From the IMG/VR virus record IMGVR_UViG_3300028558_000016, positions 62,001 to 126,000 of that record: 64,000 bases of DNA. One strand, 5' to 3'. Each line of letters opens with the position of its first letter. The first letter of the stretch is position 1. Of this stretch, positions 3,149 to 64,000 are shown one piece after another. The translations under genes were made by a program, and so were the position numbers. Under the pieces are notes generated by a model that worked only from the letters and a program-made list of their open reading frames with translations, ran no database searches and had not been told where the DNA came from.

Positions 3149-3627
3149 TAACAAAAATTATATCAGGCGGTCAAACCGGTGCGGATCAAGGTGGATTGAA
3201 AGCTGCCAAGAGATATGGAATTGAAACTGGAGGACATTGCCCAAAGGGAGGTCTTACAGAAGATGGCAACAATCCAAACTTGATGAAGGTGTTCGGGCTC
3301 ATTGAAACCACCTCAGACAAATATCCTGCAAGGACATTTGAGAATGCTAAAAACAGCGATGGGACAATAAGATTTGCACACGATTTTAATTCAAGAGGAG
3401 AACTATTGACGCTTAAAGCAATCAACCAATATAACAAACCTCACATTGATGTGAATGTTTCTGCCAATCACCAAACAACACCTAAGATGGTTGCTGACTG
3501 GATAATCAATAACAAAATAAGCGTATTGAATGTTGCAGGAAACAGAGAGTCAACATGCGAAGGATTAGAACAATTCGTTATTGAATTTTTAAGAGAAGTC
3601 ATTAGCCTAACTAATTATGGAAACTAA
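3145..3627 (+). CDS. SLOG-family 'putative molybdenum carrier' protein
   Basis: IISGGQTGAD, RT..N...SDGT, LNVAGNRES. Confidence 0.85.
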   Translation: MITKIISGGQTGADQGGLKAAKRYGIETGGHCPKGGLTEDGNNPNLMKVFGLIETTSDKYPARTFENAKNSDGTIRFAHDFNSRGELLTLKAINQYNKPHIDVNVSANHQTTPKMVADWIINNKISVLNVAGNRESTCEGLEQFVIEFLREVISLTNYGN

Positions 3628-61760: not shown

Positions 61761-61762
61761 CT

Positions 61763-61842
61763 GGAGGAAACATGGGTTCGAATCCCATACGAAATGGAAA
61801 CACATTTCGTTCGTTTAGTGGCAGGACGTCTCCCCGAATTGG
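61763..61842 (+). ncRNA. circularly permuted tRNA-like element (YrlA-like Y RNA or permuted tRNA)
   Basis: Order is T-arm, closed acceptor stem, D-arm; the ends form the anticodon-stem equivalent GGAGG/TCTCC. Confidence 0.75.
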
Positions 61843-61848
61843 AAGTTT

Positions 61849-62129: not shown

Positions 62130-62203
62130 GGTCCTATGGTGGAATTGGTTAACACGTCAGTTTCTCAAACTGAAGATTACGGGTTCGATCCCCGTTGGGA
62201 CTA
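62130..62203 (+). tRNA. tRNA-Glu(CTC)
   Basis: Stem TCAGT/ACTGA, loop TTCTCAA. Confidence 0.9.
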
Positions 62204-62207
62204 CGAA

Positions 62208-62756: not shown

Positions 62757-62842
62757 GTTGCCGTATGCAAATTGGTTTAAGCGAACAGACTTTCAATCTG
62801 TGTTCCGTATGGAACGTGCGGGTTCGAACCCCGTCGGCAATA
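62757..62842 (+). tRNA. atypical class II tRNA: TTC (Glu) anticodon with long variable arm and A73
   Basis: ACAGA-CTTTCAA-TCTGT, then GTTCC-GTAT-GGAAC variable arm. Confidence 0.8.
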
Positions 62843-62928
62843 CAAAAATAAAATAATAGGAGGACCCAGGCTGTGGACGCAACAAAAATGTAATTTCTCT
62901 TTACGAACAGTTTTGCAAAGAGAACGGA

Positions 62929-63720
62929 GTGGAATTTGAAATAGTAAAATCCGTAATTCCACATGATGACACAACTCTTTTCTGCTGTTCAGGAATGCAA
63001 CAGTATAAAAGCAAGTTTAAAGATCAAAATTATAAATGCACGATTTCAAACATCCAACCGTGCATCAGATTAAATGATCTTGAAGAAATAGGAGACAGCA
63101 CTCATTTCCTATACTTCAACATGATGGGATTCTTTTCTTTCAGAGAATGGACTGTGAAAAGAACAATTGATTTTTGGATGTCGTTCATTAATAAGATTGG
63201 TCTTAAAGTGGATTATGTTACAATCCATCCAGACAAAAAAGAATGGAAAGACTTTTATATTGAATACAATGTTGAAGTAAAAGAAGATCTCGAATGCACT
63301 TGGACTGATGGAGACCTTGGAGGATACTGCACAGAATTTTATGTGAACGGTATTGAGATAGGAAACATAGTCAATTGCAATGGTGATTGCATAGATGTTG
63401 GATTTGGTTTAGAAAGACTTGACATGCTTGTCAACAATAAAACAAAAGATGAGATAAGCGTGTTGAAGGAAACCATTGAAAAGATAATTGAAAGCGGTTA
63501 TGTCCCTGGACCTAAACAGCAGGGATACATCTTGAGAAAGCTTTTGAGATTGTTATATGTGAAAGGTGGAAGTATCGATCATGAATTCTTTGTCAAGGAA
63601 AAAGAAAGACAGGAACGATTGGTAAGAAAATATTCTTTGCTAAAACAAAAGCACAAAGACAAAAGCAAAGAATGGTGGTATGGAACACATGGAATTGATT
63701 TGAATGAAATGGGGCCTTAG
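62929..63720 (+). CDS. miniature alanyl-tRNA synthetase (catalytic domain and compressed helical domain; no editing or C-Ala domain)
   Basis: TLF..SGMQQYK, QPCIR.ND...GD..H...F.M.G.FSF, IEIGNIV, IDVGFGLERL, GYILRKLLR, Y.THG. Confidence 0.85.
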   Translation: MEFEIVKSVIPHDDTTLFCCSGMQQYKSKFKDQNYKCTISNIQPCIRLNDLEEIGDSTHFLYFNMMGFFSFREWTVKRTIDFWMSFINKIGLKVDYVTIHPDKKEWKDFYIEYNVEVKEDLECTWTDGDLGGYCTEFYVNGIEIGNIVNCNGDCIDVGFGLERLDMLVNNKTKDEISVLKETIEKIIESGYVPGPKQQGYILRKLLRLLYVKGGSIDHEFFVKEKERQERLVRKYSLLKQKHKDKSKEWWYGTHGIDLNEMGP

Positions 63721-63785
63721 CTCATTTGGCTTAGAGCGCTTGCCTGGCAGGCAAGAGGTGACGGGTTCGAAACCCGTAGGCTCCA
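63711..63785 (+). tRNA. tRNA-Ala(GGC)
   Basis: G3:U70, loop CTGGCAG; overlaps the AlaRS stop codon. Confidence 0.9.
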
Positions 63786-63789
63786 CTAT

Positions 63790-63854
63790 CGGAAAGGATC
63801 ACAACATCCCGTACGAGAAAGAACGACACAACTGTTGTGAGTTGGAAAGTTCTT
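63790..63854 (+). ncRNA. candidate kissing-loop RNA
   Basis: Hairpin loops CACAAC and GTTGTG are exact complements. Confidence 0.5.
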
Positions 63855-63855
63855 C

Positions 63856-63927
63856 GGGATCATAGTATAAGGGCAAGTACGCATCCCGCTCAGGGATGAA
63901 ATGCAGGTTCGAATCCTGTTGGTTCTA
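63856..63927 (+). tRNA. atypical tRNA (nominal CTC anticodon, G33, G3:U70, A73)
   Basis: GGGATCA/TGGTTCT acceptor, CATCC-CGCTCAG-GGATG, canonical T-arm. Confidence 0.65.
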
Positions 63928-63932
63928 CAATT

Positions 63933-64000
63933 GGGGAATTGATTTGAAATTGGCTATCATGTTAGACTTGCAATCTTTCGTTACGGGTTCGAGCCCCGTA
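63933..64000 (+). tRNA. tRNA-Ala(TGC)-like, truncated by the window end, weak anticodon stem
   Basis: GGGGAAT start, loop CTTGCAA, T-arm ACGGG-TTCGAGC-CCCGT. Confidence 0.6.

What the first reader, a model, noticed from the sequence alone, without database searches (positions are those of the whole stretch)
63790..63854. Kissing-loop RNA filling a tRNA spacer
Seen: hairpin 1 is GGAT-(CACAAC)-ATCC (63796-63809). Hairpin 2 is AAGAAC-gaca-CAACT-(GTTGTG)-AGTTG-gaaa-GTTCTT (63819-63854). The two 6-nt loops are exact reverse complements. The element spans almost the whole spacer, so tRNA processing would release it as a ~70-nt RNA. Inference: a compact tertiary-folded ncRNA (nuclease-resistant element, ribozyme, or antitoxin-like decoy).
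Basis: seen in the sequence. Interest (0 to 1): 0.6.

Follow-up and report, generated by a model that had tools for sequence, protein, structure and literature searches.

The report
Conserved two-hairpin leader before odd phage tRNA
The 69 bases between two tRNA genes of a 482-kb soil phage fold into two hairpins that related phages keep through matching base changes, so this is a real, undescribed small RNA structure, but whether its two loops touch and what it does are still untested.

Summary
Hairpin 1 is GGAT-CACAAC-ATCC (63796-63809). Hairpin 2 is 63819-63854. The two 6-nt loops are exact reverse complements.

On one sequence this is not beyond chance. Hairpin pairs with complementary loops occur about as often in this genome (13) as in shuffled copies (4-17).

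Two diverged copies from other public assemblies change the picture. In L026, six of seven substitutions lie in stems and none breaks a pair: two compensatory pairs in hairpin 2 and two changes to G.U. In L039, the only two substitutions face each other at the foot of hairpin 1 (A.C to G.U). The G.U pairs work only on the + strand, the tRNA strand. Loops, internal loop and linkers never vary, so loop covariation cannot be tested.

The element is present wherever the downstream non-canonical 'tRNA-Glu(CUC)' (G33 instead of U33) is present and absent where that gene is absent. Its upstream tRNA differs between copies.

There is no Rfam match, no paralogue and no tRNA or tmRNA signal.

Best reading: a new structured RNA leader tied to an odd tRNA-like gene. 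Loop-loop kissing is plausible but unproven. The ribozyme and decoy ideas have no support.

The parts
63711..63786 (+). tRNA-Ala(GGC), the upstream neighbour in this copy. Its first 10 bases overlap the end of the AlaRS-related ORF.
   Evidence: ARAGORN and Rfam, 59.9 bits. The ORF is 62929-63720. In L039 the upstream neighbour is tRNA-Glu(UUC) instead.
63787..63855 (+). The conserved 69-nt element, which fills the whole spacer.
   Evidence: It has the same length and no indels in L026 (62/69 identical) and L039 (67/69 identical). The covariance model R1 scores 97-102 bits on the three copies and nothing else.
63789..63816 (+). Predicted outer 3-bp stem (63789-63791 with 63814-63816) that encloses hairpin 1.
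   Evidence: Present in the minimum-energy fold. It is invariant in all copies, so there is no comparative evidence either way.
63795..63810 (+). Hairpin 1: a 4-bp stem GGAT/ATCC plus a foot position 63795/63810 (A.C here).
   Evidence: In L026, 63806 A>G turns U-A into U.G. In L039, 63795 A>G and 63810 C>T turn A.C into G.U in register. The chance that two random substitutions do this is about 1.3e-3.
63800..63805 (+). Loop 1, CACAAC.
   Evidence: Invariant in 3 of 3 copies. It is the exact reverse complement of loop 2.
63819..63854 (+). Hairpin 2: a 6-bp basal stem, a 4x4 internal loop (GACA/GAAA), a 5-bp apical stem and a 6-nt loop.
   Evidence: In L026, 63820 A>T with 63853 T>A changes A-U to U-A. 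63832 C>T with 63841 G>A changes C-G to U-A. 63831 A>G changes A-U to G.U. Pair probabilities are 0.89-1.0 in every sequence context folded.
63834..63839 (+). Loop 2, GTTGTG.
   Evidence: Invariant in 3 of 3 copies. The loop-loop duplex is -5.4 kcal/mol when computed as a two-strand duplex.
63856..63928 (+). Non-canonical tRNA-like gene, called tRNA-Glu(CUC). Its anticodon loop is C-G-CUC-A-G, with G33 instead of U33. The acceptor stem is weak. The element is always found with this gene.
   Evidence: Rfam 46.3 bits. The cloverleaf is kept by compensatory changes and the anticodon arm is invariant in L026 and L039. The gene is absent together with the element in L024/L025, L027/L028 and L043.
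63933..64000 (+). Start of a tRNA-Ala(UGC)-like gene with an aberrant D arm. It runs past the window end to L001 1721.
   Evidence: Rfam 40.1 bits at L001 1647-1721. ARAGORN does not call it. The same gene order is seen in L026 and L039.

Best explanation
The 69 nt are a selectively maintained RNA structure on the + strand, inside a co-oriented tRNA array of an uncultivated 482-kb rhizosphere phage.

The structure has two parts. Hairpin 1 is a short stem with loop CACAAC. Hairpin 2 is a two-part stem with a 4x4 internal loop and loop GUUGUG.

The element behaves as the 5' leader of the downstream non-canonical tRNA-like gene (G33, weak acceptor stem). It starts right after whatever tRNA lies upstream. 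It ends 1 nt before the tRNA-like gene, so leader positions -2 to -7 are locked in the basal stem of hairpin 2.

Most likely mode of action (inferred):
- The array is transcribed as one precursor.
- The leader folds on its own, probably compacted by a 6-bp loop-loop (kissing) helix.
- Folded in this way, it slows or gates RNase P cleavage of the odd tRNA-like RNA, or protects its folding. Alternatively it stays attached, giving a roughly 142-nt composite RNA.

Shown: the anatomy, the conservation pattern, the strand, and the co-occurrence with the tRNA-like gene.

Inferred: transcription, processing, kissing, and any effect on RNase P.
For: 1. Anatomy is confirmed.
2. L026 (from a different run, neighbouring AspRS-like protein 79% identical) has 7 substitutions in the 69 nt. 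Six lie in stems and none breaks a pair: two compensatory pairs in two different helices of hairpin 2 and two changes to G.U. A random-substitution simulation gives P = 7e-5 for no broken pair with six or more stem substitutions, and P = 1.2e-3 for two or more compensatory pairs.
3. L039 (a third run) has only 2 substitutions. They face each other at the foot of hairpin 1, changing A.C to G.U. P is about 1.3e-3.
4. With the 3' partners slid by 1-3 columns, only 32-44% of cells pair and there are no compensatory pairs. The real structure pairs at 97-100%.
5. The G.U pairs would be A.C mismatches on the opposite strand, so the signal belongs to the tRNA strand.
6. Unpaired positions carry 1 of the 9 substitutions, and that one is at -1 of the tRNA-like gene.
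7. The element and the tRNA-like gene are present together in the window, L026 and L039. The upstream tRNA is Ala(GGC), Ala(GGC) and Glu(UUC) respectively. Both are absent together in L024/L025, L027/L028 and L043.
8. Contigs of two further runs, X7 and X8, cover the spacer with substitutions but no indels inside it.
9. No + strand promoter-like or terminator-like site lies near it.
10. A 5' leader sequestered in a hairpin directly before a tRNA reduces RNase P cleavage in engineered E. coli constructs (PMC8925977).
Against: - There are only three distinct sequences, and they are close. Flanking non-coding and coding DNA is 88-94% identical, so sequence identity alone says nothing.
- The loops never vary, so kissing has no comparative test.
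- On single-sequence statistics the loop complementarity is what chance gives per roughly 40-50 kb, and the fold z-score is only about -2.
- In the window sequence, hairpin 1 competes with an alternative pairing to the tRNA-like acceptor strands. Its pair probability is about 0.4 in that context, although this alternative is not conserved.
- The co-occurrence with the tRNA-like gene could be mechanical. If array rearrangements cross over in the 3' parts of tRNA genes, every spacer travels with its downstream gene.
- RNase P does cut tRNAs separated by only 4 nt elsewhere in this array, so a nearby helix need not block it.
- No RNA data exist for this phage.
Confidence: 0.55

Rival explanations
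1. Free small RNA. 3' maturation of the upstream tRNA and RNase P cleavage of the downstream one release the 69-nt piece. Its kissing-loop fold makes it stable, and it acts in trans as a decoy, a sponge or a protein-binding RNA.
For: The conserved block coincides with the processing boundaries in three contexts. The structure is conserved. The loops and linkers are invariant, which would fit a trans-binding surface. There is precedent: the 3' external transcribed spacer of glyW-cysT-leuZ acts as an sRNA sponge (PMC8383071).
Against: There is no RNA evidence. No recurrent complementary target motif was found: the hexamers occur at roughly expected frequency in the genome. The element is never found apart from the tRNA-like gene in the loci examined. 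There is a single copy per genome.
Confidence: 0.2
2. Neutral spacer. The hairpins and the complementary loops are chance features, and their conservation reflects recent common ancestry.
For: The genome-wide count of such hairpin pairs equals that in shuffled genomes. The window has 7 loci with 6-nt loop complementarity. The spacer is no more identical than the neighbouring DNA. Several other spacers in this genome have stronger z-scores.
Against: The placement and type of 8 of the 9 substitutions preserve or create pairs (P = 7e-5 and P = 1.3e-3, in two independent lineages). The spacer has no indels, while the neighbouring intergenic DNA has 4-6-nt indels.
Confidence: 0.12
3. Self-cleaving ribozyme or ligand-sensing riboswitch built on a hairpin-hairpin pseudoknot.
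For: The element is compact, its single-stranded nucleotides are invariant, and a 6-bp tertiary pairing is possible.
Against: No Rfam 15 family matches at E <= 10 in a 3-kb search, and that library includes the known small ribozymes and two-hairpin riboswitches. Nothing here identifies a cleavage site or a ligand.
Confidence: 0.04
4. DNA-level signal: the 13-nt palindrome CACAAC-T-GTTGTG plus a third half-site is an operator or a recombination site.
For: The palindrome is perfect in the window sequence.
Against: It is unique in the 482-kb genome. The palindrome is destroyed in L026 (CACAGT-T-GTTGTG), while the hairpin stem is restored by a second change. The G.U changes make sense only in single-stranded + strand RNA.
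Confidence: 0.02
5. Decayed tRNA gene. The spacer has the length of a tRNA, and these arrays do contain tRNA remnants.
For: It is 69 nt long. A T-arm remnant exists in another spacer, 61762-61848.
Against: The Rfam tRNA model gives no hit at E <= 10. The best local alignment to any of the 55 tRNAs scores within the shuffle range (28 against 24.1 +/- 2.8, 11% of shuffles as high), and the alignment to the adjacent tRNA-like gene scores at the shuffle mean. A pseudogene would not show compensatory changes for a non-tRNA fold.
Confidence: 0.03

Closest known systems
RNAs derived from tRNA-operon spacers, for example E. coli 3'ETS-leuZ of glyW-cysT-leuZ (Lalaouna et al. 2015, as summarised in PMC8383071)
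   Same: It is a non-tRNA segment of a polycistronic tRNA transcript. It is delimited by tRNA processing sites, and it is proposed to have a function of its own.
   Different: 3'ETS-leuZ works by linear base pairing with Hfq-dependent sRNAs and has no defined two-hairpin fold. Here the evidence is for a conserved fold, no target is known, and the element is internal and tied to one particular tRNA-like gene.
Stable small RNAs encoded in the phage T4 tRNA gene cluster (species 1 and 2, rnaC and rnaD). This rests on my own knowledge and was not checked in a paper here.
   Same: They are phage-encoded, lie among tRNA genes, are co-transcribed and processed with them, and their function is still unknown.
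   Different: The T4 RNAs are longer (roughly 120-140 nt), and there is no sequence or model match. The present element is 69 nt and sits directly against a tRNA-like gene.
Engineered RNase P riboswitches with a sequester hairpin directly upstream of a tRNA (PMC8925977)
   Same: A hairpin that ends next to position -1 masks the 5' leader, and a second structured module lies upstream of it.
   Different: Those constructs are synthetic and ligand-controlled. Here no ligand, no switching and no effect on RNase P has been shown.
Natural kissing-loop RNAs: the guanidine-II (mini-ykkC) riboswitch with two tandem hairpins, the lysine riboswitch L2-L3 pairing and the TAR/TAR* 6-bp complex. This rests on my own knowledge.
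   Same: Two neighbouring hairpins have loops that can pair. Full pairing of 6-nt loops is sterically known, and an internal loop in one arm could supply the bend that is needed.
   Different: The guanidine-II loops are conserved ACGR tetraloops. There is no Rfam match, and the loop-loop pairing here is only a complementarity, not a demonstrated contact.

Membership tests
Any Rfam 15 family (4227 models, including small ribozymes and riboswitches) | Covariance-model match over the 69 nt | tested here: not met
   There is no hit in L001 1501-1569 at the gathering threshold or at E <= 10 in a 3-kb search.
tRNA (RF00005), or a decayed tRNA | Cloverleaf or sequence similarity to a tRNA | tested here: not met
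   The tRNA model gives no hit at E <= 10. Local alignment to all 55 genomic tRNAs falls within the shuffle range.
tmRNA | Match to the tmRNA model. This was considered because AlaRS-related and SmpB genes flank the array. | tested here: not met
   The phage's tmRNA lies elsewhere, at C1:223297-223699 with 101 bits. Nothing over the cut-off lies at the spacer.
Guanidine-II (mini-ykkC) type two-hairpin kissing riboswitch | Two hairpins, each with a conserved ACGR tetraloop | tested here: not met
   The loops are 6 nt, CACAAC and GUUGUG. There is no Rfam hit.
Intrinsic terminator | GC-rich hairpin followed by a run of T | tested here: not met
   The scan finds no terminator-like site on the + strand. 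Hairpin 2 is followed by C and then the tRNA-like gene.
Conserved structured RNA (generic) | Helices kept through compensatory and wobble substitutions in independent lineages | tested here: met
   There are two compensatory pairs, two wobble changes and one A.C to G.U change, with no broken pair. P = 7e-5 and P = 1.3e-3. Only three sequences are available.
Kissing-loop (loop-loop pseudoknot) RNA | Covariation between the two loops, or direct structural evidence | tested here: inconclusive
   All 6 proposed loop-loop pairs are invariant in 3 of 3 copies. The complementarity is perfect and the duplex is -5.4 kcal/mol, but there is no variation to test.
Functional RNA derived from a tRNA-operon spacer (3'ETS-leuZ type) | Release from the precursor and accumulation as a discrete RNA with a trans target | not testable with these tools
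   No RNA run holds the sequence. The runs laid on it are DNA contigs only.

The most novel reading that the evidence does not exclude
The element is a natural gate on RNase P. It is a two-hairpin, kissing-loop leader whose folded state hides positions -2 to -7 of a non-canonical (G33) tRNA-like RNA. It releases that RNA for maturation only when the loop-loop contact or hairpin 2 is opened by a signal, which could be a ligand, another RNA such as a tRNA, a protein or temperature. This would give a huge phage timed control over a translation-reprogramming or decoy tRNA.
Probability: 0.08. Interest if true: 0.8.

Novelty: new variant of a known kind. Interest (0 to 1): 0.45.

Why it matters
Huge phages carry large tRNA arrays (PMC7162821), and the DNA between the tRNA genes is usually ignored. 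This work shows that one spacer is a maintained RNA fold that matches no described family and is tied to an abnormal tRNA-like gene.

If the leader controls maturation of that gene, it would be a natural example of structure-gated RNase P processing. If it is released, it would be a new phage small RNA.

At 69 nt, with a possible 6-bp intramolecular kissing helix, it is also a convenient object for structural work.

Several other spacers in the same genome fold even more strongly, so structured spacers may be a general, unexplored feature of these arrays.

The known distribution is narrow: three sequenced copies plus two runs with unread variants. The function is unknown, which limits the present weight of the finding.

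Tried and rejected
Searches for more copies that found nothing useful:
- Exact and relaxed DNA patterns from the spacer and from both flanking tRNAs in viral contigs gave only chance hits or none.
- The one metagenome-contig scan returned only the window's own contig.
- The genome-contig scan gave one chance match in GC-rich coding DNA of an Acidobacteriota MAG.
- A distant-mode search of 50,697 phage records hit only the tRNA-Ala gene.
- Relatives found through the AlaRS-related protein have different downstream tRNAs or contigs that end too early.
- The IMG/VR relatives L038, L041 and L042, and the loci L040 and L043, lack the element.
- For two ENA contigs, no DNA was available.

Read laying (3069 letters, one call) showed diverged contigs of runs X7 and X8 across the spacer.

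Ideas rejected:
- Recurrent regulatory palindrome: unique in the genome and not conserved.
- Part of a tmRNA.
- Decayed tRNA or a duplicate of the neighbouring tRNA-like gene.
- Paralogous family within the genome.
- Alanine identity (G3.U70) as an invariant of the tRNA-like gene: it holds in the window and L026, but L039 has A3-U70.
- An alternative fold that pairs hairpin 1 with the tRNA-like acceptor strands: predicted for the window sequence but not conserved in L026 or L039.

The tool's own column-shuffle control is uninformative with only 2-3 sequences. I used the slide control and my own substitution simulations instead.

Full report
**Observation.** Hairpin 1 is GGAT / CACAAC / ATCC at 63796-63809. 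Hairpin 2 at 63819-63854 has a 6-bp basal stem AAGAAC/GTTCTT, a 4x4 internal loop GACA/GAAA, a 5-bp apical stem CAACT/AGTTG and the loop GTTGTG. The two 6-nt loops are exact reverse complements. ARAGORN and Rfam place tRNA-Ala(GGC) at 63711-63786 and a gene called tRNA-Glu(CUC) at 63856-63928, so the spacer is 63787-63855, 69 nt. RNAfold returns exactly the two hairpins plus a 3-bp outer stem around hairpin 1: -17.1 kcal/mol, z = -1.92, 8 of 200 shuffles as good.

**Context.** The window is bases 62001-126000 of a single 482,156-bp virus record, identical to contig Ga0265326_10000002. It is found mainly in rhizosphere and soil metagenomes. The genome has 37% G+C and 55 ARAGORN tRNAs in several arrays. 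The array here lies entirely on the + strand. It follows a 263-aa alanyl-tRNA-synthetase-related ORF (PF01411, N-terminal part only) whose stop codon lies inside tRNA-Ala(GGC). After the 'tRNA-Glu(CUC)' come a tRNA-Ala(UGC)-like gene (Rfam 40 bits, missed by ARAGORN), a 77-aa ParB-like ORF, an AspRS/AsnRS-like gene and SmpB. No promoter-like or terminator-like site is predicted on the + strand near the spacer.

**Single-sequence statistics.** Only 2 of 5000 dinucleotide shuffles of this 69-mer give a minimum-energy fold with 6 nt or more of loop-loop complementarity. Folding every 69-nt window of both strands finds 7 loci with 6 nt or more, although this one is the most compact and most stable. 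A fold-free count over the whole genome (4-bp stems, 6-8-nt loops, within 80 nt, 6 complementary loop bases) finds 13 pairs, against 4-17 (mean about 9) in locally shuffled genomes. CACAAC also occurs at 63827-63832, which makes a 13-nt palindrome with loop 2. That palindrome is unique in the genome.

**Search for relatives.**
- Identical copies exist in two Logan assemblies (L018 and L019).
- Relatives reached through the AlaRS-related protein have other tRNAs downstream or end too early.
- Pattern scans of IMG/VR, JGI metagenomes and GTDB genomes gave nothing homologous. The same is true of 50,697 phage records.
- Reads-level mapping showed that a soil run (X7) and a groundwater run (X8) hold diverged contigs across the spacer: 4 substitutions over L001 1463-1667, 5 over 1446-1545 and 12 over 1516-1616. 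No indel was reported inside 1501-1569.
- Two usable copies came from neighbouring proteins. The AspRS-like protein led to L026 (79% identical protein). The ParB-like ORF led to L039 (95% identical).

**Comparative result.** The L026 spacer (3205-3273) is also 69 nt and differs at 7 places:
- 63806 A>G: the closing U-A pair of hairpin 1 becomes U.G.
- 63820 A>T with 63853 T>A: A-U becomes U-A in the basal stem of hairpin 2.
- 63831 A>G: A-U becomes G.U.
- 63832 C>T with 63841 G>A: C-G becomes U-A in the apical stem.
- 63855 C>A: an unpaired base, at position -1 of the next gene.

Six of the seven substitutions are in stems, and none breaks a pair. If 7 substitutions are placed at random on the window sequence, the probability of no broken pair with six or more of them in stems is 7e-5. 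The probability of two or more compensatory pairs is 1.2e-3.

The L039 spacer (915-983) differs at only two places, 63795 A>G and 63810 C>T. These face each other directly below hairpin 1 and turn A.C into G.U. Two random substitutions do this with probability of about 1.3e-3.

When the 3' partners are slid by 1-3 columns, pairing drops from 97-100% to 32-44% and no compensatory pair remains. The three changes to G.U would be A.C mismatches on the other strand, so the signal belongs to + strand RNA, the strand of the tRNAs. The palindrome is destroyed in L026 while the stem is repaired, which rules out a DNA palindrome as the selected feature.

Overall identity of the spacer (90% and 97%) is no higher than that of the neighbouring intergenic and coding DNA (88-94%). 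But that intergenic DNA has 4-6-nt indels and the spacer has none. The evidence therefore lies in the pattern of change, not the amount. It rests on three sequences.

**The loops.** Both loops, the 4x4 internal loop and the linkers are invariant in all three copies. Eight of the nine substitutions lie in stems or at the foot of a stem. This is the pattern of an RNA whose single-stranded parts matter. With only 3-12% divergence, though, invariance of 12 loop bases is not significant in itself, and it gives no covariation test of the kissing helix (helix 3: six pairs, none ever varies).

In favour of kissing:
- Once the hairpins are accepted as real on independent grounds, perfect 6-nt Watson-Crick complementarity of two 6-nt loops has an a priori chance of 1 in 4096.
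- Both loops are fully unpaired in the ensemble of the isolated element.
- The duplex is worth -5.4 kcal/mol even when counted as bimolecular.
- Full pairing of 6-nt loops is known from other systems (my own knowledge).

Against kissing, or unknown:
- The element was picked because of this complementarity.
- The geometry needs a bend in at least one arm.
- Nothing has been measured.

I put loop-loop pairing at about even odds.

**Link to the downstream gene.** In the window and in L026 the upstream gene is tRNA-Ala(GGC). In L039 it is tRNA-Glu(UUC). In all three, homology starts directly after the upstream tRNA, and the same tRNA-like gene follows after 69 nt. In L024/L025, whose AspRS-like protein is 90% identical to the window's and therefore closer than L026's, tRNA-Ala(GGC) is followed after 2 nt by the tRNA-Ala(UGC)-like gene. 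The element and the tRNA-like gene are missing together. L027/L028 and L043 also lack both. So the unit of gain and loss is element plus tRNA-like gene.

That gene is unusual. Its anticodon loop is C-G-CUC-A-G, with G33 where tRNAs almost always have U33. In the window copy the acceptor stem has three G.U pairs. The cloverleaf is kept by compensatory changes, and the anticodon arm is invariant. G3.U70 is present in two copies but is A3-U70 in L039, so I do not claim alanine identity.

One caveat applies to the link. If rearrangements in these arrays cross over in the conserved 3' parts of tRNA genes, any spacer would travel with its downstream gene. The link could then be mechanical.

**What it is not.**
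- No Rfam family matches at E <= 10.
- It is not a tRNA or a tRNA remnant.
- It is not the phage's tmRNA, which lies at C1:223297-223699.
- It is not a terminator.
- It is not a repeated motif or a paralogous family.
- It is not found by the covariance model R1 in any other locus fetched.
- It holds no plausible ORF.

**Mechanism.** Shown: a conserved two-hairpin fold on the tRNA strand that fills the leader of an odd tRNA-like gene, with hairpin 2 ending at position -2. Inferred: the array is one transcript, and the ends of the element coincide with the 3' processing site of the upstream tRNA and the RNase P site of the tRNA-like gene.

I consider a cis role the most likely. The stably folded, perhaps kissing-compacted, leader would slow or gate RNase P cleavage, keep the leader from invading the weak acceptor stem, or remain attached as a roughly 142-nt RNA. 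Engineered constructs show that a hairpin that sequesters the leader directly before a tRNA lowers RNase P cleavage in E. coli (PMC8925977).

From my own knowledge, the stable RNAs of the T4 tRNA cluster are a second precedent. This reading cannot be separated from the cis model without RNA data, and none exists. The ribozyme and riboswitch readings have no positive evidence.

**Novelty and verdict.** Structured or functional pieces of tRNA transcripts are a known kind of thing. This particular fold matches no described family, and it sits in huge-phage tRNA arrays, whose spacers have not been examined. I rate it a new variant of a known kind, of moderate interest. The secondary structure is well supported for so few sequences. 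The kissing contact is plausible but untested, and the function is unknown. The decisive data are the letters of the X7 and X8 variants, a database-wide model search, and simple in vitro probing and RNase P assays.

Noticed in passing
window 63856-63928 (also L026 3274-3346 and L039 984-1056): The gene called tRNA-Glu(CUC) is non-canonical. Its anticodon loop is C-G-CUC-A-G, with G33 instead of the near-universal U33, and C32/G38 could pair to leave a 5-nt loop. The anticodon arm is invariant in three copies, while the acceptor and T stems change in a compensatory way. G3.U70 is present in two copies and A3-U70 in the third. A canonical tRNA-Glu(CUC) exists at 62130-62204.
   Followed up: partly
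window 62757-62843; genome C1 5778, 6974, 7373, 386605, 387507, 413915, 414375; L041: tRNA-Glu(UUC) is 87 nt long with a true long variable arm (5-bp stem). It is conserved in L024, L026, L027 and L028. The genome has further 84-92-nt tRNAs with Asn, Lys, Met, Gln, His and Trp anticodons, and a related IMG/VR contig shows the same. Long-arm (class II-like) tRNAs for these amino acids are unusual and might be charged differently.
   Followed up: partly
window 63933-64000, continuing to L001 1721: A tRNA-Ala(UGC)-like gene with an aberrant D arm. Rfam scores it at 40 bits, and ARAGORN does not call it.
   Followed up: partly
window 62929-63720: A 263-aa alanyl-tRNA-synthetase-related protein (only the N-terminal part of PF01411). 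Its TAG stop lies inside the first bases of tRNA-Ala(GGC), and the same overlap is seen in L022. The family is large (784 hits at E <= 1e-20), mostly in metagenomes, with some rhizobial genomes.
   Followed up: partly
genome C1:223297-223699 and L018 3558-3980 (outside the window): The phage encodes its own tmRNA (Rfam 101 bits; ARAGORN missed it) and an SmpB gene just downstream of this tRNA array.
   Followed up: partly
genome C1 358020-358092 (-), 368276-368349 (+), 374278-374351 (+) (outside the window): Three tRNAs carry a CUA anticodon (amber suppressor type). Whether the phage reads TAG as a sense codon was not examined, and no alternative code was used here.
   Followed up: no
genome C1 7982-8121, 6269-6406, 417826-417982, 392386-392511 (outside the window): Other spacers between tRNAs fold far better than shuffles (z = -4.7, -3.2, -2.8 and -2.4). 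They may hide unrecognised tRNA-like genes or further structured spacer RNAs.
   Followed up: no
window 61762-61848: The spacer between tRNA-Asp and tRNA-Cys contains a T-arm-like remnant (gggttcgaatccc). These arrays therefore also carry decayed tRNA pieces.
   Followed up: no
window 63795-63811 with 63855-63928: In the window copy, the 5' strand of hairpin 1 (GGATCA) repeats the 5' acceptor strand of the tRNA-like gene (GGGATCA). The minimum-energy fold of leader plus tRNA-like RNA pairs the hairpin 1 strands with the acceptor strands. This alternative is not conserved in L026 or L039.
   Followed up: yes
L001 2037-2098 (genome C1 126323-126384, just past the window end): A partial tRNA-like match (Rfam 29.9 bits) lies just ahead of the AspRS-like gene. 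In L039, ARAGORN calls a tRNA-Cys at the corresponding place, overlapping the called start of that gene.
   Followed up: no
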